Virus record (IMG/VR): IMGVR_UViG_3300042879_006196
Coordinates: 283,393-347,392 of that record
Reading direction: 5' to 3' (one strand)
DNA length: 64,000 nucleotides
In this document: positions 5,694-55,729 of the stretch, one piece after another
How positions within the stretch are numbered: position 1 is the stretch's first letter
How the letters are laid out: the number at the start of each line of letters is the position of its first letter
The notes under the pieces: generated by a model
What the model was told of the DNA's origin: nothing
Database searches by the model: none
What the model saw: only the letters and a program-made list of their open reading frames with translations
Program-made: the position numbers and the translations under genes

Positions 5694-6395
5694 TTAGACT
5701 CTACCAAATTGATCTTCATATCTTGTTATGTCATCTTCAGAGAATTTCTCTCCAGTTTGAATTTCAATAAAAATCAAATCTGTGTCTCCAGTGTTAACTA
5801 CTCTATGTTTTTCATTTTTTTTGACCTGACACACAGATCCTTTTTCAATTGGATGTTGATTATCTTCAAGAACAAAGATGCCATTCCCCTCAATAATTAA
5901 CCATAACTCATCACGATGCTGATGAGATTGTAAACTTGATGCTTTTCCTGGCAACACTTTTATTTCTTTCACGTGATATTTTTTATTATAAGCTAGAGTG
6001 GAAAAATTACCCCAAGGTCTTTCTTCACAAGGCTTGATTATTTTTTCAATTTCATCTTCAGTGATTCCATTTCTATTGGGAGTAAAACTGAAGGCTGTTT
6101 TCATGTTTGAGTTGGGCTTAAGATCATTAACAACAATTCTTTCACCTCTTCCGCAACCCATTACTAATTCATCATAAAATATATTTAACTTTCTTAATTG
6201 ATCTTCGGTTTGTTTTCTTGTTGAATTTCTTCTACCTGTCGTTAATACAATTTTAGCCCCGTTTTTTTCAATAGTATCTAAAAACTGCCTTGTCATCGTA
6301 ATCATTGATAAATTCTGGTCTGAAAGCTGTGCTCTAAGAGAACCATAATGCACCAATAGCACCCCATCTATGTCAAGAAAGTAAGTTTGTGTCAT
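5694..6395 (-). CDS. HAD-like domain fused to mannose-6-phosphate isomerase type II cupin
   Basis: FLDIDGVL, TTGR; ERPWG, SLQSHQHRDELW, EDDITRYEDQFGR. Confidence 0.8.
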   Translation of the reverse strand: MTQTYFLDIDGVLLVHYGSLRAQLSDQNLSMITMTRQFLDTIEKNGAKIVLTTGRRNSTRKQTEDQLRKLNIFYDELVMGCGRGERIVVNDLKPNSNMKTAFSFTPNRNGITEDEIEKIIKPCEERPWGNFSTLAYNKKYHVKEIKVLPGKASSLQSHQHRDELWLIIEGNGIFVLEDNQHPIEKGSVCQVKKNEKHRVVNTGDTDLIFIEIQTGEKFSEDDITRYEDQFGRV

Positions 6396-6417
6396 ATAAT
6401 TGTTGTACAACTAATAG

Positions 6418-6960
6418 ATGCTTTGGGATTTAGCAATTAAAAACATTTGTAAAGAATCAAATTTAGTTTTAGAATTTGGCGTACACACAGGGAGCACAAT
6501 CACGTATTTTAGAAATAGACTACCTGCTTTTTATAATTTTTATGGATTTGATAGTTTTGAGGGTTTACCAGAAGATTGGACTGGAACAGATTTAGAAAAG
6601 GGATTTTTCAGTTTGAACGGAGAAGTGCCTGATATTGAAGGAGTTAATTTAGTAAAAGGTTGGTTCTCTGAAAGTTTACCTAAATGGCTTGAAGGACGTG
6701 AGCCTGAAAAAATTGCATTGCTACATATTGATTGTGATTTATATTCTAGCACAAAAACAGTTTTAGATAACCTCACTCATATGATTCAACCTGGCACTCT
6801 TATTTTATTTGACGAGTGGTTTTACCCAGCACCAGAAAAGTTGAATCAACATGAGCAAAAAGCATTTTTTGAATGGGTTTTAGCCAATCAAATCGATTTT
6901 ACTTTTATTGAAAGTAATTATCATGGCGATCAACCCAGAAAGCTAGTGAAGATTAAATAA
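6418..6960 (+). CDS. TylF/MycF-like O-methyltransferase
   Basis: LEFGVHTG, GFDSFEGLPE, KGWF, LHIDCDLYSS, FDE. Confidence 0.85.
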   Translation: MLWDLAIKNICKESNLVLEFGVHTGSTITYFRNRLPAFYNFYGFDSFEGLPEDWTGTDLEKGFFSLNGEVPDIEGVNLVKGWFSESLPKWLEGREPEKIALLHIDCDLYSSTKTVLDNLTHMIQPGTLILFDEWFYPAPEKLNQHEQKAFFEWVLANQIDFTFIESNYHGDQPRKLVKIK

Positions 6961-7825
6961 TCTTGCCGAATAATTCAACAAGATAATCTATATCAAAATA
7001 TTTATTATATGTGACATAAGGTTGCATCAAATAATAAATATATAGGTCTTTGTCGTTGTTAATTTCAATTACTTTATCTGCAAGTTCATCAAAATCTTTG
7101 AATGCTTTAACGTTAAGAAAACTTTCGCTATTAAAGTCATCATTAATCAAATCACTGCCCCAATAAATAGGAATACAATTTGCTATCATTGGTTCAAAAA
7201 TCTTTTCTGTAGTGTACCCTTTGTAGCCATTGAATTCATCATTGTTTTCAATAGCAAAGCAAAACTTGTATTGTCTAAGAAAATCAATTTTAGCTTGTGA
7301 TCCTGTAATGGCACCAGGCTCTCCTGGTATGACTGGGTGGTTGTTCATGTGTCTACCTGCACAGTCAACATGCATCCTGGTCAAAAAATGATTAACAATT
7401 GCTTCTCTGGGACATTTGCCACCCGCACCTTGTGAAATGTATGTAATCAGTTTAGATTTTTCATTTAAAATTTCTTTTGTGTAATCTCTTGTTAAAATTG
7501 ATTTATAAGATTTTGTTATTCCGAATTTCCATAAATCATAGGCATATAGCGGATACAAAGGTAGCCTTAAATGTGTCTCACTGTCCACATAAAATGAAGT
7601 AAGTGCATAATCACATGCGCCTGAGTTGAAAAAAGGCTCTCCGCTAAAATAGACAGCCTTAGCATTGCCATTTTTTTGGAAATTAGGTGAATCAGTGAAA
7701 ATAATATCAGGATTTTCACTTGTCACTTCTACGTCATGTGTTTGGCTTAAAACCCAAACAAAAAAGTTATCCTTCTTATCGAAGGTGCCCCAGAAACTAT
7801 CGAACCATACTTTTAATTTTTTCAT
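6953..7825 (-). CDS. Alpha-1,3-fucosyltransferase-like (GT10)
   Basis: KIDFLRQYKFCFAIEN...YTTEKIFEPMIANCIPIYWG. Confidence 0.85.
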   Translation of the reverse strand: MKKLKVWFDSFWGTFDKKDNFFVWVLSQTHDVEVTSENPDIIFTDSPNFQKNGNAKAVYFSGEPFFNSGACDYALTSFYVDSETHLRLPLYPLYAYDLWKFGITKSYKSILTRDYTKEILNEKSKLITYISQGAGGKCPREAIVNHFLTRMHVDCAGRHMNNHPVIPGEPGAITGSQAKIDFLRQYKFCFAIENNDEFNGYKGYTTEKIFEPMIANCIPIYWGSDLINDDFNSESFLNVKAFKDFDELADKVIEINNDKDLYIYYLMQPYVTYNKYFDIDYLVELFGKII

Positions 7826-33702: not shown

Positions 33703-35009
33703 ATTGCAGTAATTAGAAAATATTCTACTATTTTTCTAAAACATGTAGGTGATAGCAAATATTAAACTGTAAAAGAACTATATGTTGAAAGCATATAAGT
33801 TTTTGATAAAACCTGCGAAAGAGCAAAGTGAGATGTTTGAAAAACATTTTGGCGCTGCTAGGTTTGTCTATAACTGGGGCTTAGAACAAAAAACAAAATC
33901 TTATCAAGAAGGAAAGAAAACATTGACTTTTCTTGGATTAGGACCAGAACTTGTTAAACTTAAAAAAGAAAACATCTGGATGAAAGAAGTTAATAGCCAA
34001 TCACTATTGGCTTCTCTAAAGAATTTAGACAATGCCTACACTAGATTCTTTCGAGAAAAGAAAGGATTTCCTAAATTTAAATCAAAATACAATCCAAAAC
34101 AATCCTTCCAATGCCCTCAACATTGTACTGTAGATTTTGAAAAAGGATTGCTAAATATCCCTAAAGTTAAAAATATCAAAACTGTATTCCACAGACAATT
34201 TGAAGGAGATATCAAAACTGTAACGATTTCTAAAGTGCCTTCTGGAAAATATTATGTTTCTATCCTTGTGGAAGATGGAAAGTCTTTACAAATTAAACCC
34301 AAACTTGACAGAAACGATGCAATAGGTATTGACATGGGATTGAAAGATTTTGTAGTTACTTCAGATGGAGATAAGATTGCTAATCCGAAATATCTCAGAA
34401 AATCCGAAGAACGACTTGCAAGAAGACAAAGAAAATTAAGTGTAAAAAAGAAAGGGAGCAATAATAGAAATAAACAACGTAAAAAAGTAGCAAAGCTACA
34501 TAAAAAAATAGCTAATCAAAGAAAAGACTTTCTGCATAAAGTATCTCATCAAATAGTTCACAAGAATCACGGAACGATTTGTGTTGAAGACTTGTGTGTT
34601 AAAGGGATGGTCAAAAATAGAAAATTAGCTAAATCAATATCTGATGCAGGATGGGGAATGTTCTATAATTTTCTGAAATACAAATCAGAATGGCATGGAA
34701 AGAATTTCCTTGATATTGGAAGATTTGAACCATCGAGCAAGATGTGTTCAGTCTGCGGGAATATCAAATCAGATTTGACATTATCTGATAGAGAATGGAT
34801 ATGTTCTAAATGTGAAACAAAACACGATAGAGATATCAATGCTTCAATTAATATTCGGAACATGGCATTCACTAATCAGAATTTGGTAAGATGTATAGGA
34901 CTGGAACAGCCCGAATCAACGCCTGTGGAGAAGAAAGCTCTGGTTAGAAATAATGAAACTATCTTCTGCGAAGCAGGAAGCCTCACCCCTTGTGGGTGAG
35001 GTAGTTCAC
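33668..35009 (+). mobile_element. TnpB-only IS200/IS605 (IS1341-type) element 1
   Basis: Left-end hairpin CCCCA..TGGGG; right-end hairpin CCTCACCC..GGGTGAGG followed by TAGTTCAC; ends shared with element 2. Confidence 0.85.
33782..34999 (+). CDS. tnpB: RNA-guided endonuclease TnpB
   Basis: GIDMG, VEDL, CSVC..CSKC, DRDINAS; RuvC triad intact. Confidence 0.95.
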   Translation: MLKAYKFLIKPAKEQSEMFEKHFGAARFVYNWGLEQKTKSYQEGKKTLTFLGLGPELVKLKKENIWMKEVNSQSLLASLKNLDNAYTRFFREKKGFPKFKSKYNPKQSFQCPQHCTVDFEKGLLNIPKVKNIKTVFHRQFEGDIKTVTISKVPSGKYYVSILVEDGKSLQIKPKLDRNDAIGIDMGLKDFVVTSDGDKIANPKYLRKSEERLARRQRKLSVKKKGSNNRNKQRKKVAKLHKKIANQRKDFLHKVSHQIVHKNHGTICVEDLCVKGMVKNRKLAKSISDAGWGMFYNFLKYKSEWHGKNFLDIGRFEPSSKMCSVCGNIKSDLTLSDREWICSKCETKHDRDINASINIRNMAFTNQNLVRCIGLEQPESTPVEKKALVRNNETIFCEAGSLTPCG

Positions 35010-41363: not shown

Positions 41364-41381
41364 GCGTATAATTATACAGAA

Positions 41382-41957
41382 ATGCTAATACCTTACGTTA
41401 TTGAAAAAACTGGCGAGAACGAACGCTCGTATGATTTATTTTCCAGATTGCTGAAAGATAGAATTATTATGCTTGGAAGTGGAGTGAATGAGCAAACTGC
41501 TAATGTTATCATTGCTCAAATGCTCTTTCTTGAAAAGGAAGATCCAAAAGCTGACATTCATTTTTACATAAACTCACCAGGTGGCTCAGTGTATGATGGA
41601 CTTGCAATTTATGATGTCATGCAGTTTGTATCTTGCCCTGTTGCTACCACTTGTTTTGGAGTTGCGGCGTCTATGGGAGCTGTACTCTTAGCTGGTGGAG
41701 AAAAAGGCAAAAGAAGAATTTTACCTAATTCTCGTGTGATGATTCATCAAGTTTCATCAGGATTTAGAGGCACTACCGCAGATATCAATGTCCAAGCGAA
41801 AGAAACTAATTTTCTCATGGATAAACTTATGCAAATACTTTCTGGTCATACTGGAAAAACTACCGAGCAAGTAAGAATAGATTGCGACCGTGATTATTGG
41901 ATGAGTGCTGAAGAAGCTCTTGAGTATGGTATTATAGACGAGATTATAAAGAAATGA
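41382..41957 (+). CDS. clpP: ATP-dependent Clp protease proteolytic subunit
   Basis: [23 protein letters not shown]. Confidence 0.97.
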
Positions 41958-42031: not shown

Positions 42032-43153
42032 ATGAAAGAAATTTTTTCAAAAATATCTGAACAAATAATGCATTCGCCAAATTTAAAACATTTAATTTTA
42101 GCCATTGGATTGAAATATAATACTTCAAATTACATTAAAGTTTCAAATTATATTAAAAACAATAATATTAATGATAGTCATTTCCCTCACCCAAAAGATA
42201 AATTAAAATATATTTCGAATGAAGTGTTTATAGAAGCATATCACAAATCAAAATCTCTTGGTGAACTTTTGTCTCAACTTGGATTAAATCACTCTTACTA
42301 TAAAAAATTGCATAAAAAAATTTTTGATTTGAAATTAGATGTTTCAAAATTTCAATTTGTTAAATGGTCTGAAGCTGAAATTGAGTGTCTCAAAGAAAAT
42401 TATCCTACTAAAACAGAAGATGAATTAAAAATTTTATTTCCTAACAGAACAATTGAAGGACTACAAAGATATGCTTGTTATTATAAAATTAAAAAAACAA
42501 AAAATAATGTTTCTTCTAATTTACGTATTCTTTTAAATAATAATTTAGAATCTTTATATTGGATAGGTTTTATTATGGCTGATGGTACAATTGATTTAAA
42601 ACGTGGCAGGTTGAAAATTTCTGTTGACAAAAAAGATGCAGAACATTTATTCAAGTTTAAATCCTATATTGAATGCGAAAATTCTGTGAAAAATTATTGT
42701 CAATCAAAAAACGCTTTTGGCATTAGTGATTTAAGTGAAATTTCTTTATACAATAAAAATGTTATTGAGAAAATCTCTGACAAATTTAATCTTAAACCAA
42801 AAAAAACATATAATCCTCCTGATTGTAAAATTTTTGAACAATTCGAAATTAATCAAATTTTGTCTTTGATTATAGGCTACATAGATGGAGATGGATGTAT
42901 TTATAAAAATAAAAATGGAAACATTGACATTAAAATAGTTAGTCACGAAAGTTGGATTTTTGTTTTTGAGTTTTGGCAAAAATGTATTGAAAAAAAATTC
43001 AAAACAAAAATTCCTTTTGCGAAAATAAATAGTTCAAAATTGTCACAAATAAATTTTAGCAAAAAACAAATTATTTTTGAATTAAAAAAGTTTGTTGAAG
43101 AAAATAATTTACCTGTACTCGAAAGAAAATGGAATAAAATTTCGTATAGTTAA
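42032..43153 (+). CDS. Free-standing double-motif LAGLIDADG homing endonuclease
   Basis: WIGFIMADG and IIGYIDGDG; C-terminal LERKW. Confidence 0.85.
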   Translation: MKEIFSKISEQIMHSPNLKHLILAIGLKYNTSNYIKVSNYIKNNNINDSHFPHPKDKLKYISNEVFIEAYHKSKSLGELLSQLGLNHSYYKKLHKKIFDLKLDVSKFQFVKWSEAEIECLKENYPTKTEDELKILFPNRTIEGLQRYACYYKIKKTKNNVSSNLRILLNNNLESLYWIGFIMADGTIDLKRGRLKISVDKKDAEHLFKFKSYIECENSVKNYCQSKNAFGISDLSEISLYNKNVIEKISDKFNLKPKKTYNPPDCKIFEQFEINQILSLIIGYIDGDGCIYKNKNGNIDIKIVSHESWIFVFEFWQKCIEKKFKTKIPFAKINSSKLSQINFSKKQIIFELKKFVEENNLPVLERKWNKISYS

Positions 43154-43155
43154 AT

Positions 43156-43677
43156 ATGAAAAATAATTTAAAAGCAATAGTTATGGACCTGGATGGAGTG
43201 GTTGTAAATAGCTCATCAAGGTTTAAAAGATTGAATCTTGATGCCTTTATTCGCAGAGATGCAAAAGCTTGGATAAAATCAGTGGAATGGTACAATGCTG
43301 ATTGCAGAGGCGATGAAGTGATTGATTTGGGTGTTGATTTACTTGAAATGCTATGCACATTTTACAAACCAGATTGTGTGTTTTTTATCACAGCTAGAGG
43401 GCATGGCGGATATAAACCCACTTTGCAATGGCTTAAAGATGAAGGGATTTGGAAAGAAGATTGTGTTTTGATTATGCAACCAGAAGATTTTGATAATTAC
43501 CACTTCTACACACAATCTGACCATGCTTCATATAAGAAAAAAGAAGCTCTGAAAATTATGGAAAATTATGAGATTGTGTATGCTGTGGACGATAGCGAAG
43601 ACAATGTTCAGGCATACAGAGATTTAAAAATTCCCACGCTGAAGTTTTGTGTGCCTATCGGAAGAGTGCTGGTTTAA
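43156..43677 (+). CDS. HAD phosphatase (PNKP 3'-phosphatase-like)
   Basis: DLDG, TAR, K, VDD. Confidence 0.75.
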   Translation: MKNNLKAIVMDLDGVVVNSSSRFKRLNLDAFIRRDAKAWIKSVEWYNADCRGDEVIDLGVDLLEMLCTFYKPDCVFFITARGHGGYKPTLQWLKDEGIWKEDCVLIMQPEDFDNYHFYTQSDHASYKKKEALKIMENYEIVYAVDDSEDNVQAYRDLKIPTLKFCVPIGRVLV

Positions 43678-43697
43678 TTTTTAATTTGGGTGAATGG

Positions 43698-44042
43698 ATG
43701 AGAAGAAAGATTAAAGATAGTGTGATTGAAAATTTAGAATGCGTTTGCCATTGTTTTTTAGCGCTATCTATGCTGATTAGTTTCTTCATTTCAATATTTT
43801 CTCTCCCTTCTTTTTTGCTAAGAGATATAGGACCTTTTACAAGAGACGTAGGAATAATTGCATTTATATGGTTCTTGATATCGCTTATATGTTTTAAAGT
43901 TAATGATACAAAAGGCTTCTTAAAATTTTTGCATAAAAGAAATGACAAAATAGATGAAGAAGAAAAAGCTAGACAGCAGGCTCTGCTTCTAGAAGCCGAA
44001 GAAAGAAACAGGGCTGAACTTCAGATTTGGGTGAATGGATGA
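43698..44042 (+). CDS. QIWV-array membrane protein 1
   Basis: Two TM segments, charged tail, QIWVNG. Confidence 0.75.
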   Translation: MRRKIKDSVIENLECVCHCFLALSMLISFFISIFSLPSFLLRDIGPFTRDVGIIAFIWFLISLICFKVNDTKGFLKFLHKRNDKIDEEEKARQQALLLEAEERNRAELQIWVNG

Positions 44043-44362
44043 GAAGAAAGATTAAAGATAGTGTGATTGATACTTTAGCAACCGTTTTGTTTTGCTTTCT
44101 TTTTCTATCTTGTCCGATTAGCTTTGTCATCTTTCTATGGTATGCCTCTGGGGACGTTTCTCCGTACATAACAGGAATTGCATTTATATATTTCTTGATA
44201 TCGCTTATAGGTAGTGCATTTTATAATATAGATGGCTCACTAAACTTTTTGCGTAAACGAAATGGCAAAATTGATGAAGAAGAAAAAGCTCAACTTCAAG
44301 CTAAAGCTCAAGCTGAAGCAGAAAGAACTAGAATTGAATCTCAGATTTGGGTGAGCGAATGA
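44039..44362 (+). CDS. QIWV-array membrane protein 2
   Basis: Paralog, ATGA overlap. Confidence 0.75.
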   Translation: MRRKIKDSVIDTLATVLFCFLFLSCPISFVIFLWYASGDVSPYITGIAFIYFLISLIGSAFYNIDGSLNFLRKRNGKIDEEEKAQLQAKAQAEAERTRIESQIWVSE

Positions 44363-44685
44363 AAAGAAAGTTAACTGAAAAGACAGAAGCTGCTTTAATT
44401 CTCTTTCTTTTTATTTTCCTTTTGCTATCTATTTTGATTAGCTTTTGCATCTCTGTACGTTGGTTCTTTTGGTGCAATAACTGGAACGTAGCACTAATTG
44501 CATTTATATGGTTCTTGATATCGTACAAATGTTTTGTAGGTTTTATATGGAACGATGGCATCTCAGACTTTTTGCATTCAAGAAATGACAAAATAGATGA
44601 AGAAGAAAAAGCTAGACAGCAGGCTCTGCTTCTGGAAGCTGAAGAAAGAAACAGGGCTGAACTTCAGATTTGGGTGAATGAATGA
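44359..44685 (+). CDS. QIWV-array membrane protein 3
   Basis: Paralog; 3' ~100 bp near-identical to gene 1. Confidence 0.75.
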   Translation: MKRKLTEKTEAALILFLFIFLLLSILISFCISVRWFFWCNNWNVALIAFIWFLISYKCFVGFIWNDGISDFLHSRNDKIDEEEKARQQALLLEAEERNRAELQIWVNE

Positions 44686-44993
44686 AAGACGGAAAGTATA
44701 CAAAAGAAGATAAAAGATATATGGAAAGTATGTGGATTGACTTTGGTGTTATACTTGTGTTTGCTATTCCATGCTGTTCTAATATACCTGGATTAGAAAA
44801 TTATGGGATTATTACAGGAATAATTCCTATCGTACTTTTTTTTGGTGTGATATTTTTAATTCGAAAGTATGTGCGCACACACAATCAAAAGATAGATAAA
44901 GAATTTCAAGCTGAACAGGAGAAAAAGGAAGCTGAACTTCAAGCTAAAGCAGACAAAGAAAAAGCTAATTCTCAGATTTGGGTGATCGAATGA
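44682..44993 (+). CDS. QIWV-array membrane protein 4
   Basis: Paralog. Confidence 0.75.
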   Translation: MKDGKYTKEDKRYMESMWIDFGVILVFAIPCCSNIPGLENYGIITGIIPIVLFFGVIFLIRKYVRTHNQKIDKEFQAEQEKKEAELQAKADKEKANSQIWVIE

Positions 44994-45382
44994 ATGAAAC
45001 TATTTGCTATATTTTTGTACCTATTTCTTTTTCTTTATTTTTTATTATTTTAGTAGGTTTTCTAAATCACTTTTCATTAATGGAAAACATTGAAGAAGAA
45101 GAAAAGAAAAAAACAATTAAAATGAGAGCAGAGGAAGAGAGAAAAAGACTTGAAATAGAAGCCGAAAAACTAAACTTGCACAACAAGCAATTAAAGCTTC
45201 ACCTAAAGATTTTGTTGAGCCAGTTCATGGAAAAAAGAATTAAAATAGAAGGAGAGAAAGCTCAACAGAAAGCTCGCCAGATTGCTCAACTTCAAGAAGA
45301 ACAACAAAGTCTTAGAATAAAGGCAGAAGAAGCTGAAGCAGAAAGAACTAGAACACAATCTCAGATTTGGGTGAATGAATGA
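44990..45382 (+). CDS. QIWV-array membrane protein 5
   Basis: One TM plus long coiled coil. Confidence 0.75.
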   Translation: MNETICYIFVPISFSLFFIILVGFLNHFSLMENIEEEEKKKTIKMRAEEERKRLEIEAEKLNLHNKQLKLHLKILLSQFMEKRIKIEGEKAQQKARQIAQLQEEQQSLRIKAEEAEAERTRTQSQIWVNE

Positions 45383-45615
45383 TTTCGGAATTGTATTCTG
45401 TATTTTCGGAGATGGACTTCTTTTCTAAGTTTTGCTTTTGTTTTGCTCTCTTTATGCTTGCATTACTCGTGTGGTGTTTCTTTATAACATTTATTCGAGA
45501 AGAAGCAGAAGAAGCAGAAGAGAGAAAAAGACTTGAAAAACAGGCAGAAGAAGAAAAACTTAAAATTGAAGCCGAAGAAAGAATAAGAGCTAATTCTCAA
45601 ATATGGGTGATTTGA
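45379..45615 (+). CDS. QIWV-array membrane protein 6
   Basis: One TM, QIWVI. Confidence 0.75.
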   Translation: MISELYSVFSEMDFFSKFCFCFALFMLALLVWCFFITFIREEAEEAEERKRLEKQAEEEKLKIEAEERIRANSQIWVI

Positions 45616-45657
45616 TTATGCAATTTTTCAATTTCAAGCGTATAAATAGGTGAGCAT

Positions 45658-46632
45658 ATGTTGAACAAAAATTTTTCAAACGAAGAGCTTCTTGAGCTTA
45701 GACGAAAGCACAAAGAAAAACTTGCACTTCAGGAGCAAGAAACCCAGGAATTGCAAAGAAGAAAAATAGAAGCAGAAAAAAAAGAAGAAGCTGACCGATT
45801 GACATTAACAATTAACAAACTCGTTAATTCATTATTTATTGAGTTTAACAAATCCTTTCAAAGATTTATCCTTACTGAGGATAAAAAATTTGCAATTCAA
45901 GTGGATAGTTCACATGCTGTTTCAACTCTGCTTCCTGGTAGTGAAAAATATAGCAATGTACCTTTTTTGATGCATGAAGCACTAGTTCGAAAAATCAACG
46001 ATACTTACCCAAAGCTCAAATTTTTGAGCTACGTACAACAAAACGCAAATAATACCTACTTTTCAATAGTTTTCGAGCCAATATTGCATAACATTATTCC
46101 CTGTGACATAATCTCAGAAACTCTGCCGAGATGGAAATCTATAAAGACTCTGCCACAATCTGGAAGTGTGTATGTATGTTACACTAATGTAACTGGCGAA
46201 ATAAGTATTCATAAATTTGAAGGAATTGATTTAAGTTCTTTAATCAAAAAGCCAGATTTGCTTCCCACTTTTTGGTTAGAAAAATTACCCAGTTTTAAGG
46301 CAAACATTTTAAGTGCTATAAACATAGTTGGTATGTTGTCATTATTATCAAATATTCCTTTGGTTGTAATTTCAAAGAATTTATTCATCGGGCTTGCTCT
46401 TGGCGCTATTGAAAGTATTGCAATGTTTGTTGCCAATCAAGTGCTCAAAAGCGACAGTATTGAGTCACAATATTCAGAAGATTTATCAAACTACCTTAAA
46501 AGTAATGAATATCTGGCTAATAAAGAGATTGTGTCTTGGTATGATGAATTACCAAAAGATTTTGTAGTAGATGAAAAAACAACCAAACAAAAAGCCTTAG
46601 CTGAGTTTGATAACATCGCAAACACAATCTAA
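45658..46632 (+). CDS. Hypothetical membrane protein
   Basis: N-terminal coiled coil, C-terminal TM pair. Confidence 0.55.
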   Translation: MLNKNFSNEELLELRRKHKEKLALQEQETQELQRRKIEAEKKEEADRLTLTINKLVNSLFIEFNKSFQRFILTEDKKFAIQVDSSHAVSTLLPGSEKYSNVPFLMHEALVRKINDTYPKLKFLSYVQQNANNTYFSIVFEPILHNIIPCDIISETLPRWKSIKTLPQSGSVYVCYTNVTGEISIHKFEGIDLSSLIKKPDLLPTFWLEKLPSFKANILSAINIVGMLSLLSNIPLVVISKNLFIGLALGAIESIAMFVANQVLKSDSIESQYSEDLSNYLKSNEYLANKEIVSWYDELPKDFVVDEKTTKQKALAEFDNIANTI

Positions 46633-46697: not shown

Positions 46698-48110
46698 ATG
46701 TTGAAGCCCATTTACACAATCTCATTAATATCTATTACAGCTATGTCAAATGCTCAATCTGCAGATTTGTCGTTGCCTGTTGGTAAATCTTCCTTTACCA
46801 TAGATTCAAATAAAAAAATAAATTGGGCTGGATCAAATATGAAATATGATTTTGGCAATTTGAAATATGCTGGGACATTTGCAAATAATTCTCAAGTGCA
46901 CAATTTCAATGCAAAGCTAAGTGATGTCACAATGAGCTATACAAGTTCTGCTCCAAAAAACACAGTGGGTATCACTTATCGCGGACTTACATTCACTTCC
47001 GAGGATTTCAATCGAAATGAAGTGCAGAATGTATTTGCCTCAAAAGTATTGGTAGATAACAAAAATACATTATCTTATCAACAAAAACAATTGTCTATTT
47101 CAATGTCAAAGACTATAGGTAGAAATTTTAATTATGATAGCTATTCTTTTGCTTCCAAGGGGACAAAGATTGATTATGTGGCGTCTGAGAAGCCTTTAAT
47201 GATGACAGACGCTTGGAATCGCCCCTATGCCTCAGAAACGTCTATTATGTTTCAATCTCCTACATTCTCAGCACGAATAATGGACAATTATGATGATGTT
47301 CTTTATTCAACAAAAGGTTTCTCCATTAGGACTATTCATCATCCTAAAAGATTTGAGAATACATTAAACTATTCTAATAAAAACTATAATCTATCTTACG
47401 TTCAATTTAATGATGGATACTCTAAAAATTTCTTGAATATAAATGGCAAAGATTTCAAGTTTAAAATGGCAAACGATGGTGAAACTAATATTAGTCAATT
47501 AGAAACAAAAGACACCACAATAGCACATGGTAACAATCAAAACTTTGTTCAATCAAAAATTGATAAAATTGAATATAGATTGTCTGAAAGTACAGGCAAA
47601 ATTAACTATGATGTTAAAGTGGGAAATATTGGCGTAAGAGATGGCGACACATATGGAATTGTCCAACCGATTAAAAATGTTTCTGTAAAAGCATCATCTG
47701 AAAACGGTGTGGAACAAGTAAGTTATAATACATCTGTAAATAAAACAAATATATCTTTAAAATACAATAATCAATTTGATGTTTATGATTTTTATTTCAA
47801 ACAAAATGCATTTAGTGTTTATGAAAACTCATTCTCTTTGATAGGTCAGAATAGATCACAATTTAAAGATTCGTTTTCTTTCAGTTTGGTTAATCCAAAA
47901 TTTAATTTTGCGTCGGATGTTATTAATGACATTTACGCTTTGACATTCAAAAACAGCAATAATTTTGTGCTATCAATGATTAAAGATCAAAAACAAAATT
48001 TTCTTGGATTGACAAATACAGGTAAATTTGGAAATCTTGGCGTTCAGTATAATATGAACACGCAAATGTTCGACAGATTGTCATTTAACTATGTTATCAA
48101 ATTTCATTGA
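46698..48110 (+). CDS. Exported beta-strand-rich protein, possible outer-membrane protein
   Basis: Signal peptide SNA|Q; C-terminus FNYVIKFH. Confidence 0.55.
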   Translation: MLKPIYTISLISITAMSNAQSADLSLPVGKSSFTIDSNKKINWAGSNMKYDFGNLKYAGTFANNSQVHNFNAKLSDVTMSYTSSAPKNTVGITYRGLTFTSEDFNRNEVQNVFASKVLVDNKNTLSYQQKQLSISMSKTIGRNFNYDSYSFASKGTKIDYVASEKPLMMTDAWNRPYASETSIMFQSPTFSARIMDNYDDVLYSTKGFSIRTIHHPKRFENTLNYSNKNYNLSYVQFNDGYSKNFLNINGKDFKFKMANDGETNISQLETKDTTIAHGNNQNFVQSKIDKIEYRLSESTGKINYDVKVGNIGVRDGDTYGIVQPIKNVSVKASSENGVEQVSYNTSVNKTNISLKYNNQFDVYDFYFKQNAFSVYENSFSLIGQNRSQFKDSFSFSLVNPKFNFASDVINDIYALTFKNSNNFVLSMIKDQKQNFLGLTNTGKFGNLGVQYNMNTQMFDRLSFNYVIKFH

Positions 48111-50324: not shown

Positions 50325-52190
50325 TTAATCAACTACTTCAGCGTCCACAACATTAGGATCTATCACTTCTTCATTAGACCCTTGAACATTTTGGTACAAT
50401 ACTTCTGAAAGTTTATGTGAAACTTGCAGTAGGTTGTCTTTAGCTGTTTGAATTTGATTTTTGTCATTTGTTTTTAAAGCTTCTTTAGTTTTTTCTAAAG
50501 CTTCTTGAACATCATCAATCAAGTTTTGCTCTGCTTTATCTTTCGACATTTCAATCGTGGTTTCTATACTAGAGCACAAAGTTTCAGTCTCATTCTTCAA
50601 GAGAATAAACTCTTTTGCTTCTTTATCTGCTTCAGCATATTCTTCAGCCTCTTTGATCATTCGATCAATTTCATCTTTTTCCAAGTTCGAAGATTGTGTG
50701 ATTGTGATACTTTGCTCTTTGCCAGTTCCAAGATCTTTTGCTTTCACACTTAAAATACCATTGGCATCTAAAGAAAACTCCACTTCGATTTGTGGGATTC
50801 TTGCTGGCGCAGGAGCAATCCCCGAAAGATTGAACATACCCAAGCTTTTGTTGTCTTTGGCAATAGGTCTTTCGCCTTGTAAGATATGAATAGTAACCTC
50901 AGTCTGATTATTAACAGCAGTGGTATATACACTCTTTTTCTGTGTCGGAATAGTCGTGTTTTTTTCAATAAGCACATCAACCATTCCTCCATTTACTTCA
51001 ACACCCAAACTCAAAGGAGTGACATCTAAAAGAATAATGTCCTTGACATCTCCTGCCAAAATGCCTCCTTGAACTGCCGCTCCAAGAGCCACTGCCTCAT
51101 CAGGATTCACACCTTTAGATGGCTCTAAGCCTGTAATTTCCTTAATCAAACTTTGAACACAAGGGATTCGTGAACTACCACCAACAAGAATTACTTCATT
51201 AATCTTAGATTTGTCCACACCTTCCTTGAGAGCATTTAGCAATGGTTTTTTGATTCGATCCAAGAGGGGTTTCACCATAGATTCAAAATTAGCCTTAGTC
51301 AATTCTAAATCAACATGCAATGGATTTCCATCCACTGCTGTAATGTAAGGAAGATTTATTGATGTGGTTGCCTGTGAAGAAAGTTCAATTTTAGCTTTTT
51401 CTGAAGCTTCTTTCACTCTTTGCATTGCCGCTGAATCTTTGCTGATATCTACACCAGTAGATTTTTTTGTTTCAGAAACAATCCATTCCGATACTTTATT
51501 ATCAAAATCATCTCCACCTAAATGACTATCTCCTGAAGTGCTCAAAACCTCAAATGTTCCATCACCAATATCGAGAATAGAAACATCAAAAGTTCCTCCA
51601 CCAAGGTCGAAAACCAAAATATAACCTTCTTTATCCTTGCTTACACCATAAGCCAAAGCCGCAGCTGTTGGCTCATTGATGATTCTCACTACTTCAAGCC
51701 CAGCAATTTCTCCTGCATTTTTTGTAGCTTGTCTTTGTGAGTCATCAAAGTAAGCAGGGACAGTAATCACTGCTTTACTAACAGTGGTTCCTAAGTAACT
51801 TTCAGCATCCACTTTAATTTTTTGAAGAACTGCCGCTGAAATTTCTTCTGGTGTAAAATCTTTACCCACCGCAGGAATTTCAATTACAGCTAAGCCCTTT
51901 TTGTTTTTCTTAACCTTATAACTAACTTTACCCACTTCATTAGAAATCTCATCATACTTGTGTCCCATAAAACGCTTGACAGATGAGATTGTGTTTTTGT
52001 GATTAGTGACAGCACTCCGTTTTGCAGAAATGCCAACAATCCGCTCACCATCTTTTTTCCACGATACTACGGAAGGAATAGTTCTATTTCCTTCAGATGA
52101 CGAAATCACTTTAGCTTCACCAGCTTCCATGATAGCAACGCACGAATTAGTCGTGCCAAGGTCGATTCCTAATATGTATTCTTTTGCCAT
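50325..52190 (-). CDS. dnaK: Chaperone DnaK (Hsp70)
   Basis: GIDLGTTNS, TVPAYF, DLGGGTFD, LVGGSSRIP, DAEVVD; start set 12 nt after TGTATA. Confidence 0.97.
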   Translation of the reverse strand: MAKEYILGIDLGTTNSCVAIMEAGEAKVISSSEGNRTIPSVVSWKKDGERIVGISAKRSAVTNHKNTISSVKRFMGHKYDEISNEVGKVSYKVKKNKKGLAVIEIPAVGKDFTPEEISAAVLQKIKVDAESYLGTTVSKAVITVPAYFDDSQRQATKNAGEIAGLEVVRIINEPTAAALAYGVSKDKEGYILVFDLGGGTFDVSILDIGDGTFEVLSTSGDSHLGGDDFDNKVSEWIVSETKKSTGVDISKDSAAMQRVKEASEKAKIELSSQATTSINLPYITAVDGNPLHVDLELTKANFESMVKPLLDRIKKPLLNALKEGVDKSKINEVILVGGSSRIPCVQSLIKEITGLEPSKGVNPDEAVALGAAVQGGILAGDVKDIILLDVTPLSLGVEVNGGMVDVLIEKNTTIPTQKKSVYTTAVNNQTEVTIHILQGERPIAKDNKSLGMFNLSGIAPAPARIPQIEVEFSLDANGILSVKAKDLGTGKEQSITITQSSNLEKDEIDRMIKEAEEYAEADKEAKEFILLKNETETLCSSIETTIEMSKDKAEQNLIDDVQEALEKTKEALKTNDKNQIQTAKDNLLQVSHKLSEVLYQNVQGSNEEVIDPNVVDAEVVD

Positions 52191-52247
52191 ATAAATAATA
52201 TACAAAAAAATAATAAAAAAAGTTGCTTTTTTTTCATACTTAAATCA

Positions 52248-55415: not shown

Positions 55416-55729
55416 AAAAAGCAAGTCGTGCACCAATATATACGGCGTGTGTATATCCAGATTTGGCTGAAATTTGTCGCGAGGCTGGCTATGCATTAGC
55501 AGTGCATGGTTCACTTGCCAGAGATTTTGACCTTGTTGCTATACCTTGGGTAGAAAATGTTATTATCCCAGAAATAGTTGTGCAGGAAATAACAAAAAAA
55601 TTCTCTGTCAAACAAATAGGCGAGCCAGAGTGTAAATTACATGGGAGATTGTGTTATACCTTAGCATGGATGGGTGAAGCGTTTATAGATTTTTCGTTCA
55701 TGCCTGTGCAAACACAAGAATTAAAATGA
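55412..55729 (+). CDS. Conserved phage protein, minimal NTase-like
   Basis: GYALAVHGSLARDFDLVAIPW. Confidence 0.65.
   Translation: MKKASRAPIYTACVYPDLAEICREAGYALAVHGSLARDFDLVAIPWVENVIIPEIVVQEITKKFSVKQIGEPECKLHGRLCYTLAWMGEAFIDFSFMPVQTQELK

What the first reader, a model, noticed from the sequence alone, without database searches (positions are those of the whole stretch)
43684..45615. Six-gene accordion of membrane paralogs whose QIWV codons double as the next gene's RBS
Seen: six consecutive TM plus coiled-coil genes end in QIWV(x). Each junction is TCAGATTTGGGTGAnnGrATGA (44021, 44341, 44664, 44972, 45361; variants at 43685 and 45597), with GGTGA as SD and ATGA as stop/start overlap. The same motif precedes gene 1, where it probably encodes nothing. 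Genes are mosaics: 1 and 2 share about 45 bp at the 5' end, 1 and 3 share about 100 bp at the 3' end, while TM segments diverge. Inference: the junction is a recombination and translational-coupling unit that generates a diversifying array, e.g. variable inhibitors of host membrane defence or receptor proteins; a C-terminal docking motif is an alternative.
Basis: partly seen in the sequence, partly recalled or inferred. Interest (0 to 1): 0.7.

Follow-up and report, generated by a model that had tools for sequence, protein, structure and literature searches.

The report
Shuffled phage gene array, dual-coded junctions
A lake jumbo phage carries a fast-changing row of small genes whose shared protein ending (QIWV) is written in the same DNA letters that start translation of the next gene; both layers are under selection, but what the proteins do is still unknown.

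Summary
Six overlapping (ATGA) genes at 43698-45615 encode one- or two-pass membrane proteins with a highly charged helix and a C-terminal (S/L)QIWV-x-(E/G). CAGATTTGGGTGA occurs exactly five times.

The window is the end of a 347-kb lake-water jumbo phage. The array sits downstream of clpP and a HAD phosphatase, apparently in one transcription unit.

Eleven related metagenome loci carry syntenic arrays of 2 to 9 genes. These include leucine-rich-repeat proteins with the same tail.

A double dissociation shows dual coding:
- Upstream of gene 1, where no tail is encoded, only GGGTGA-N4-ATG survives.
- In terminal genes, with no coupled gene downstream, Q-I-W is always kept (10 synonymous and 0 non-synonymous variants), while GTG-A is lost in 3 of 11.

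The array turns over quickly. A strain with 97-99% identical flanks has A-H-G instead of A-A-A-G-C-H. N- and C-terminal modules reassort. Cassette dS is 0.07 where flanking genes give about 1.0.

The function is unknown, with no Pfam, PHROG or PADLOC match. My best inference is a cytoplasmic docking tail on variable anchor or binder domains. This is a new variant of recombination-driven tandem paralog clusters.

The parts
41365..41374 (+). Phage promoter-like motif CGTATAATTA, 7 nt upstream of clpP; inferred start of the transcription unit that contains the array
   Evidence: 14 window hits against 4.95 expected; 17 of 50 genome hits lie 0-9 nt, mostly 3-5, upstream of an ORF start, against 1 of 35 for the reversed control. 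No further copy occurs until 45639.
41382..41957 (+). clpP (bona fide ClpP subfamily), first gene of the unit; in relatives its stop overlaps the HAD start
   Evidence: NF001368, 287.7 bits, cut-off 249; L009: clpP 6019-6594, HAD 6591-7103.
43156..43677 (+). HAD-superfamily (PNKP-type) phosphatase, directly upstream of the array in every related locus
43684..43697 (+). Non-coding relic of the junction (ATTTGGGTGAATGG) serving gene 1: GGGTGA plus 4 nt plus ATG
   Evidence: across 13 loci only GGGTGA-N4-ATG is invariant here; the CAGATT part has decayed (TTTTTAATT[T/C]) or been deleted.
43698..44042 (+). g1, 114 aa, two-TM hairpin plus charged helix plus LQIWVNG (cassette type A, C-module 1)
44039..44362 (+). 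g2, 107 aa, two-TM hairpin plus charged helix plus SQIWVSE (type A, C-module 0)
44359..44685 (+). g3, 108 aa, two-TM hairpin plus charged helix plus LQIWVNE (type A, C-module 1); AF2 model has three helices
44682..44993 (+). g4, 103 aa, two-TM hairpin plus charged helix plus SQIWVIE (type G)
44990..45382 (+). g5, 130 aa, one TM plus about 93-aa charged helix plus SQIWVNE (type C)
45379..45615 (+). g6, 78 aa, one TM plus charged helix plus SQIWVI; terminal gene, with tail encoded by the synonymous variants CAA ATA
44019..44042 (+). Junction 1/2, representative of the five internal junctions (also 44339-44362, 44662-44685, 44970-44993, 45359-45382): T[CT]T CAG ATT TGG GTG Ann GnA TGA, with GGGTGA 4 nt before the overlapping ATG
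45619..45654 (+). Conserved spacer after the array (an 11-codon mini-ORF on paper) holding the promoter-like motif CGTATAAATA (45639-45648) of the next gene; marks the 3' edge of the array unit
   Evidence: ATGCAATTTTTCAATTTCAA[A/G]CGTATAA conserved after the last gene in WIN, L010-L014, L016, L017.
45658..46632 (+). Conserved 324-aa protein (charged N-terminal helix, C-terminal hydrophobic helices) that bounds the array in all relatives; no family match

Best explanation
The six genes belong to an uncharacterised protein family found so far only in a clade of lake-water jumbo phages.

Architecture. Each protein has three parts:
- A variable N-terminal module: a two-TM hairpin or a single TM anchor, or, in relatives, a soluble leucine-rich-repeat domain.
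- A long, highly charged helix of variable length.
- An invariant C-terminal (S/L)QIWV-x-(E/G).

Expression (inferred). The genes follow clpP and a HAD phosphatase in what looks like one transcription unit. They are translated by stop/start coupling. The codons TGG GTG Ann of each tail supply a GGGTGA Shine-Dalgarno-like element 4 nt upstream of the next ATG, so the same 16-20 nt are selected both as peptide and as translation signal.

Evolution (shown). The array changes by homologous recombination at conserved nucleotide blocks: the junction plus 5' end, the KIDEEEKA block, and the junction again. This recombination:
- changes copy number (2-9) and gene order;
- reassorts N- and C-terminal modules;
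- moves cassettes between phage lineages.

Function (inferred, not shown). By the positive-inside rule, and because LRR members have no signal peptide, the tail is cytoplasmic. I read it as a docking peptide held out on a rigid charged spacer. It would connect many different anchors or binders to one common partner. The partner is unidentified.
For: Anatomy:
- Searches give the genes, overlaps and tails; one search gives the three-helix AF2 model; one search shows the helices are 42-67% charged.
- the family has only 24 representatives among 1.84 billion proteins, and nearly all end in SQIWV.
- the syntenic clpP-HAD-[array]-324aa locus recurs in 11 metagenome loci.
- LRR members reach Pfam LRR_14 58.8 bits (cut-off 40) and LRR_8 33.5 bits (cut-off 27).

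Dual coding:
- in 45 unique cassettes Q-I-W shows 10 synonymous and 0 non-synonymous variants (p = 3e-10; 2e-6 if only 6 events are independent).
- V is GTG in 43 of 43 although GTG is 21% of genomic Val codons, with 0 synonymous variants against 10 of 90 at the Q and I third positions (p = 0.03).
- the following codon encodes N, S or I but always starts with A.
- upstream of gene 1 only GGGTGA-N4-ATG is kept in 13 loci.
- GGTGA is lost in 3 of 11 terminal genes against 0 of 34 internal ones (p = 0.012).
- about one third of the 42 other ATGA-coupled gene pairs in this genome also have an SD-like match of 5 nt or more.

Turnover:
- L010 flanks are 99.4% and 97.1% identical, yet its array is A-H-G against A-A-A-G-C-H here.
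- 13 N-types and 11 C-types occur in varied combinations.
- mosaic blocks in the nucleotide alignments.
- dS of g1 against its L012 ortholog is 0.07, while flanking clpP and HAD give 1.0-1.1.
- variant joints appear in other lake runs.

Operon: searches find promoter-like motifs only at 41365 and 45639, and no terminator-like site inside the array.
Against: - No experiment or expression data: the two 'RNA' runs looked like DNA of relatives.
- SD use is weak genome-wide, so the strength of GGGTGA as a ribosome-binding site is inferred from conservation pattern, not measured.
- Cassettes are related by descent and recombination, so counts of variants are not fully independent events.
- Low synonymous diversity across the whole C-module means part of the junction's nucleotide invariance is recent shared ancestry or gene conversion.
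- The docking-peptide function is purely inferential. The one complex prediction tried (phage ClpX + 2 ClpP + tail) returned 'no answer'.
- AF2 places QIWV at the end of a continuous helix, which would also fit a membrane-interface or oligomerisation role.
Confidence: 0.6

Rival explanations
1. Nucleotide-only constraint. The junction is conserved purely as a ribosome-binding site, coupling element or recombination site, and the QIWV peptide is a by-product with no function of its own.
For: Rare codons CAG (15% genomic use) and GTG (21%) are nearly fixed. TCT is used in 38 of 38 Ser codons. GGGTGA is conserved even upstream of gene 1.
Against: Where the motif is non-coding, CAGATT decays while GGGTGA stays. 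At Q-I-W all 10 variants are synonymous. Terminal genes with no coupled downstream gene keep QIW in 11 of 11, including g6 with CAA ATA. The same tail is kept on unrelated N-terminal domains, including LRRs.
Confidence: 0.07
2. Protein-only constraint. QIWV is a peptide motif, and the GGTGA inside it is incidental; coupling needs only the ATGA overlap.
For: SD-like motifs are weakly enriched genome-wide. Two thirds of other ATGA-coupled pairs lack an SD match of 5 nt or more.
Against: There is no synonymous variant of GTG in 43 cassettes. The next residue varies (N, S, I) but its codon always begins with A. GGGTGA-N4-ATG is invariant upstream of gene 1, where nothing is encoded. GGTGA is lost only in terminal genes.
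Confidence: 0.08
3. Adaptors or substrates of the phage's own ClpXP protease. The variable N-domains (TM hairpins, LRRs) pick targets or sites, and the C-terminal tail docks on ClpX or ClpP. This would resemble the C-terminal ClpX-binding peptide of SspB, or F-box tails of poxvirus ankyrin proteins. Alternatively the tail is a degron that times the turnover of these proteins.
For: The array is in the clpP unit in every relative, with ATGA-coupled clpP-HAD and then the array. ClpP is a bona fide ClpP. The phage encodes a ClpX-like ATPase with a zinc-finger-like N-domain and a VGF loop. The architecture of binder, long spacer and short C-terminal hydrophobic peptide matches what is known of SspB (established knowledge). 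LRRs are protein-binding modules.
Against: Synteny is the only link. The neighbourhood as a whole is syntenic, so adjacency is weak evidence. The tail resembles no known ClpX or ClpP docking or degron motif. The complex prediction gave no answer.
Confidence: 0.15
4. Arms-race effectors. The variable TM hairpins bind and inhibit host membrane proteins (defence, receptors, superinfection exclusion), and the array diversifies under host pressure.
For: TM-hairpin parts of orthologous cassettes have dN/dS of 1.6-2.1 in four pairs (about 100 non-synonymous to 15 synonymous differences), against 0.04-0.37 in flanking genes. Turnover between near-identical strains is rapid. Cassettes are exchanged horizontally.
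Against: dN/dS above 1 in short mosaic segments can reflect relaxed constraint or recombination. There are no PADLOC or anti-defence family hits. The host is unknown. This does not explain the invariant tail by itself, although it is compatible with the docking model.
Confidence: 0.2
5. Holin/antiholin-like or other lysis-timing membrane proteins: small size, one or two TM helices, charged cytoplasmic C-terminus.
For: The generic class II holin layout is met by g1-g4. There are weak PHROG hits of g4 to a holin and an Rz-like spanin family (E = 0.014 and 0.07).
Against: The hits are not significant. No endolysin lies among the immediate neighbours examined. Six to nine holin paralogs would be unprecedented. 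LRR members without TM helices share the module.
Confidence: 0.07

Closest known systems
Staphylococcus aureus lpl tandem lipoprotein-like cluster (Tsuru and Kobayashi 2008, PMC2568036)
   Same: Both are tandem paralogs in which a highly conserved nucleotide segment provides sites for homologous recombination. In both, variable regions within one ORF are shuffled. The conserved evolutionary unit spans the 3' end of one ORF and the 5' end of the next. Copy number and order differ among strains (abstract read; here).
   Different: Here there is no intergenic region at all: the ORFs overlap by ATGA. The conserved recombination block is itself the C-terminal peptide motif plus the ribosome-binding site. 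The host is a phage, the products are TM or LRR proteins rather than lipoproteins, and cassettes also move between lineages.
PeSL-mediated modular shuffling in hyperplastic regions of T4-type phages (Arbiol et al. 2010, PMC2839356; Comeau et al. 2014, PMC4122927)
   Same: In both, short conserved repeats flank small variable phage ORFs and mediate insertion, deletion and replacement between closely related phages (titles and abstracts).
   Different: PeSLs are intergenic promoter plus stem-loop (terminator) cassettes. Here the repeat is coding, with no promoter-like or terminator-like element at the junctions, and the shuffled genes are paralogs sharing a protein module.
Poxvirus 'genomic accordions' and ankyrin/F-box (PRANC) multigene families (established knowledge, not read here)
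   Same: Both show copy-number-variable tandem families in a large virus. In ANK/F-box proteins, variable N-terminal binding repeats are combined with a short conserved C-terminal docking module.
   Different: Accordions are amplifications of near-identical copies, whereas these cassettes are 30-62% identical and of distinct types. No ubiquitin system is involved. The docking role of the tail is only inferred.
SspB-type ClpX adaptors (established knowledge)
   Same: The layout is the same: a recognition domain, a long linker, and a short hydrophobic C-terminal peptide. The genes lie next to clpP in a phage that also has clpX.
   Different: There is no sequence similarity, binding is untested, and many members are membrane-anchored.

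Membership tests
Recombination-diversified tandem paralog cluster (lpl type) | Tandem paralogous ORFs in one orientation | tested here: met
   Six head-to-tail genes here and 2-9 in relatives.
Recombination-diversified tandem paralog cluster (lpl type) | Highly conserved nucleotide block shared by all copies, flanked by variable regions | tested here: met
   Majority-base frequency averaged over 15-column blocks is 0.84-0.96 at the junction/5' end and the KIDEEEKA block, against 0.23-0.52 in the TM loop and linker, in 16 cassettes.
Recombination-diversified tandem paralog cluster (lpl type) | Reassortment (incongruence) of the variable regions within an ORF, and rearrangements between strains | tested here: met
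   N-type A pairs with C-types 0, 1 and 10; B with 2, 3 and 5; D with 1 and 2; F with 4 and 9. L010 and the window differ in number and order despite 97-99% identical flanks. No formal tree-incongruence test was run.
PeSL modular shuffling cassettes (T4-type phages) | Intergenic early promoter plus stem-loop terminator flanking each ORF | tested here: not met
   There is no intergenic space (ATGA overlaps). No phage promoter motif lies between 41375 and 45638. No terminator-like hairpin lies inside the array.
Genomic accordion (poxvirus sense) | Amplification of near-identical copies of one gene, with copy number varying in populations | tested here: not met
   Copy number varies, but the paralogs are 30-62% identical and fall into 13 N-types. 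The 6-gene form is stable in 22 lake runs.
Shine-Dalgarno-assisted translational coupling | Stop/start overlap plus a purine-rich match to the anti-SD at 4-9 nt from the start | tested here: met
   ATGA (or TGATG) occurs at every internal junction. GGTGA matches the 3' part of GGAGGTGA and lies 4 nt from the ATG.
Shine-Dalgarno-assisted translational coupling | Downstream translation depends on the element | not testable with these tools
   Only conservation evidence is available.
Leucine-rich repeat proteins (Pfam LRR_14/LRR_8/LRR_1), for the relatives' members | Score above the Pfam gathering cut-off | tested here: met
   L009 member: LRR_14 58.8 bits (cut-off 40), LRR_8 33.5 (27), LRR_1 32.4 (20.6). 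None of the six window genes is an LRR protein.
Class II holins | Small protein, two TM helices, N-in/C-in, charged C-terminus | tested here: met
   g1-g4 fit generically.
Class II holins | Family-level sequence match or adjacency to an endolysin | tested here: not met
   The best holin PHROG hit is E = 0.014 for g4 only. Neighbours are clpP, HAD and unknown proteins. The whole genome was not searched for an endolysin.
ClpX adaptors (SspB-like) | C-terminal peptide binds the ClpX N-domain and enhances delivery | tested here: inconclusive
   The complex prediction returned 'no answer'. There is no sequence similarity to known adaptors.

The most novel reading that the evidence does not exclude
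The array is a phage 'targeting kit'. It would be a recombination-shuffled library of recognition or anchor domains (hypervariable TM hairpins, LRRs), each carrying the same C-terminal QIWV peptide on a rigid charged spacer. The peptide would plug each one into the phage's own ClpXP protease, which is encoded in the same operon. The phage could then redirect proteolysis to changing host targets. That would be a prokaryotic-virus analogue of the poxvirus ankyrin/F-box substrate adaptors.
Probability: 0.12. Interest if true: 0.9.

Novelty: new variant of a known kind. Interest (0 to 1): 0.6.

Why it matters
It is an unusually clean natural example of one short sequence under two selective layers, peptide motif and translation signal. 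The two layers can be separated by comparing non-coding and terminal copies.

It shows how a jumbo phage builds a hypervariable gene array without intergenic DNA. The conserved dual-coded junction is also the recombination handle that shuffles modules, changes copy number and lets cassettes move between lineages.

The family has variable TM or LRR heads and an invariant tail, and lies in a clpP operon of a phage that also has clpX and dnaK. That makes it a concrete, testable candidate for a new phage-host interface system. Tail-peptide pull-downs would identify the hub it connects to.

Tried and rejected
- Searches with no result: megablast of the region against 50,697 phage records found nothing. 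Three scans of IMG/VR found no relative; these used the family profile, the 324-aa neighbour and HAD.
- Family libraries: Pfam, PHROGs, PADLOC and NCBIfam gave no significant match for any of the six proteins. An ESM Atlas look-up of the 324-aa neighbour gave no lead.
The six-protein alignment worked.
- HAD-tail frameshift fusion: in L009-type loci QIWVNE lies in the -1 frame of the HAD 3' end. I rejected a programmed frameshift because in the window, L010 and L012 the relic is in a different register and has lost Q, and in L013/L014 only TGGGTGA remains.
- Polyprotein by frameshift or readthrough: rejected, because in most junctions (AAT GAA TGA type) the downstream frame has TGA immediately before its ATG.
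- The 1-mismatch motif hit at 55458 lies inside an unrelated ORF and is chance.
- A PDZ domain, as a candidate C-terminal-peptide reader, is not encoded in the genome.
- No LRR cassette is present in this genome; only a 16-bit, stop-containing match was found.
- Runs labelled RNA were probably DNA of related strains, so there is no expression evidence.
- The complex prediction ClpX + 2 ClpP + tail gave no answer; it counts neither for nor against.
Full report
**1. What is in the window**

The window is the last 64 kb of a 347,392-bp IMG/VR virus record. It is about 31% G+C. It encodes DnaK (50325-52205, minus strand), sigma factors and a DNA polymerase. It also encodes a bona fide ClpP (41382-41957; NF001368, 287.7 bits against a cut-off of 249). 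Logan contigs place it in many lake-water metagenomes.

The six genes are at 43698-44042, 44039-44362, 44359-44685, 44682-44993, 44990-45382 and 45379-45615. They run head to tail on the plus strand. Each start overlaps the previous stop as ATGA. All six end (S/L)QIWV followed by 1-2 residues.

CAGATTTGGGTGA is exact five times, and no dinucleotide shuffle reaches the observed count. g1-g4 have two hydrophobic helices and g5-g6 have one. An AlphaFold2 model of g3 has helices 7-38, 42-64 and 67-107, with pLDDT 89. The C-terminal helices are 42-67% D/E/K/R with many i/i+4 opposite-charge pairs.

With K/R-rich N-termini and a basic stretch after the last TM helix, the charged helix and tail are predicted to be cytoplasmic. 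This follows from the positive-inside rule and is an inference. No other ORF in the genome ends this way.

**2. The family**

None of the six proteins matches Pfam, PHROGs, PADLOC or NCBIfam significantly. An exhaustive profile search of 1.84 billion representative proteins found only 24 relatives, and nearly all end ...SQIWV-x-E. Sources name them 'hypothetical protein', or 'LRR protein' for some.

Contig look-ups and one metagenome scan gave 14 loci (L007-L020), of which 11 came from the scan. All show the same neighbourhood: clpP, HAD phosphatase, the array, then a conserved 324-aa protein.

Arrays hold 2 to 9 genes. Some members are 174-311-aa leucine-rich-repeat proteins without TM helices. 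Their Pfam scores are above cut-off: LRR_14 58.8 bits against 40, LRR_8 33.5 against 27. These carry the same charged helix and SQIWV tail. The family is thus defined by the C-terminal module, on interchangeable N-terminal modules.

**3. One sequence, two constraints**

In 45 unique cassettes the codons are as follows:

| Residue | Codon use in cassettes | Genomic use of that codon |
|---|---|---|
| S | TCT 38/38 | 34% |
| Q | CAG 40/45 | 15% |
| I | ATT 40/45 | 61% |
| W | TGG 45/45 | single codon |
| V | GTG 43/43 | 21% |

*Protein layer.*
- All ten variants at Q-I-W are synonymous (CAA, ATA). Only 3 of 27 possible single-base changes are synonymous. This gives p = 3e-10, or 2e-6 if only six events are independent.
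- All 11 terminal genes, which have no coupled gene downstream, keep QIW. In g6 it is written CAA ATA TGG.

*RNA layer.*
- GTG never varies synonymously: 0 of 43, against 10 of 90 at the Q and I third positions (p = 0.03).
- The next residue is N, S or I, but its codon always begins with A (AAT, AGC/AGT, ATT/ATC). This completes GGTGA.
- GGTGA is destroyed (TCG, GCA, GTG-GTT) in 3 of 11 terminal genes and in 0 of 34 internal ones (p = 0.012).

*The natural control.* The copy upstream of gene 1 encodes no tail. Across 13 loci only GGGTGA-N4-ATG is invariant there. CAGATT has become TTTTTAATT[T/C] or has been deleted, and TGG has become CGG in three loci (L011, L017, L020).

*SD usage in this genome.* GGTGA pairs with the 3' part of the anti-SD (GGAGGTGA; established knowledge). 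SD-like matches of 5 nt or more occur at about a third of the other 42 ATGA-coupled pairs of this genome. First genes of units instead carry a promoter-like CGTATAA(A/T)TA 3-9 nt from the ATG. Two such motifs, at 41365 and 45639, bracket clpP-(homing endonuclease)-HAD-array. No terminator-like site lies inside the array. A single transcription unit is therefore inferred, with internal starts relying on coupling plus GGGTGA.

**4. How the array changes**

Typing N-parts and C-parts separately gives 13 N-types and 11 C-types in varied combinations. For example, A pairs with 0, 1 and 10; B with 2, 3 and 5; D with 1 and 2.

The window is A-A-A-G-C-H. L010 has flanks 99.4% and 97.1% identical to the window, yet its array is A-H-G. 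Its shared cassettes are only 89-92% identical. L012 has nine genes.

Nucleotide conservation among 16 MRRK-class cassettes peaks at the junction/5' end and at the KIDEEEKA block (0.84-0.96). It drops to 0.23-0.52 in the TM loop and linker.

Between the window and L012, clpP and HAD have dS of 1.0-1.1, but the g1 orthologs have dS of 0.07. Cassettes have therefore been exchanged between lineages much more recently than the backbone diverged.

TM-hairpin parts of four ortholog pairs have dN/dS of 1.6-2.1, about 100 non-synonymous to 15 synonymous differences. LRR cassettes give 0.4-0.5 and flanking genes 0.04-0.37. This fits diversifying selection or relaxed constraint; mosaicism limits the inference.

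In 22 lake runs the six-gene form is present with 94-98% of its words. In the four runs laid, its contigs have no mismatches, and the assembly graphs break at the repeated blocks. Other runs show alternative joints, such as 44322 to 45597 with a different C-module.

**5. Function**

Nothing tested here reveals the function. The architecture is a variable anchor or binder, a long charged spacer and an invariant cytoplasmic C-terminal peptide. I read this as a docking tail that links many heads to one partner.

The most specific candidate is the phage's own Clp system. The array is in the clpP unit in every relative. The phage also encodes a ClpX-like ATPase with a zinc-finger-like N-domain and a VGF loop. 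The layout recalls SspB-type adaptors (established knowledge). A complex prediction of ClpX + 2 ClpP + the g3 tail gave 'no answer' and is not evidence either way.

Holin-like roles are unlikely, given the LRR members and the lack of significant hits.

**6. Comparison with known systems**

The closest described pattern is the S. aureus lpl cluster. There, a conserved block inside tandem paralogs drives recombination, and the conserved unit spans the 3' end of one ORF and the 5' end of the next (PMC2568036).

T4-type PeSL cassettes also shuffle small ORFs (PMC2839356, PMC4122927). They are intergenic promoter-terminator elements, which are absent here.

The poxvirus 'accordion' label fits only loosely, because the copies here are diverged types. 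What is new is the combination of three things:
- no intergenic DNA, with the recombination handle also being a selected peptide motif and a translation signal;
- an unannotated protein family with TM and LRR heads;
- residence in a jumbo-phage clpP operon.

**7. Verdict**

The specific biological role remains open. I rate interest at 0.6 and classify it as a new variant of a known kind.

Noticed in passing
window 42032-43153 (+): A LAGLIDADG homing-endonuclease gene sits between clpP and the HAD gene. All related loci lack it, and there the clpP stop overlaps the HAD start. Identity to the closest strain L010 drops from 99.4% upstream to 92% in the HAD/g1 stretch next to the insertion.
   Followed up: partly
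window 41365-41374, 45639-45648, and 12 further hits (e.g. 15407, 19092, 26274, 62808): The promoter-like motif CGTATAA(A/T)TA lies 3-9 nt upstream of many start codons (14 hits against 4.95 expected; genome-wide 17 of 50 next to an ORF start, against 1 of 35 for a reversed control). This suggests near-leaderless first genes, and it resembles the T4 late promoter TATAAATA.
   Followed up: partly
G000:C1:243452-244891 (+), outside the window (L021:1240-2679): The phage encodes a ClpX-like AAA+ protein of 479 aa (TIGR00382, 227 bits, below cut-off). It has a C-x2-C...C-x2-H N-terminal domain and a VGF loop. Together with ClpP and DnaK this gives the phage its own proteostasis set.
   Followed up: partly
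G000:C1:14618-25399 (+), outside the window: A second set of small paralogous ORFs is rich in Q-V-W/N-Q-V repeats. Their N-termini contain 'TDCVEV', reminiscent of the 'SDCVEVKG' N-terminal segment of the relatives' LRR cassettes. This may be another multigene family of this phage.
   Followed up: no
window 46698-48110 (+): A 470-aa ORF with a signal-peptide-like N-terminus (MLKPIYTISLISITAMSNAQS...) has no family match. It is conserved downstream of the array in relatives, with dN/dS of about 0.04.
   Followed up: no
window 45619-45654 (+): An 11-codon mini-ORF (MQFFNFKRINR) follows the last array gene. Its nucleotides are conserved in eight relatives, but it overlaps the promoter-like motif of the next gene and is probably regulatory DNA rather than a gene.
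   Followed up: partly
L009:7109-7140, L015:3544-3575, L018/L019:7085-7116: In these relatives a complete CAGATTTGGGTGAATGAAT relic follows the HAD stop, but its ATG is mutated to ATA. The first (LRR) gene starts 21 nt further on, with its own AGGT. This looks like a fossil junction left by cassette replacement.
   Followed up: partly
window 33782-34999 (+): An ORF matches a transposase PHROG strongly (phrog_506, E = 9e-132), so a mobile element appears to sit inside the phage genome.
   Followed up: no
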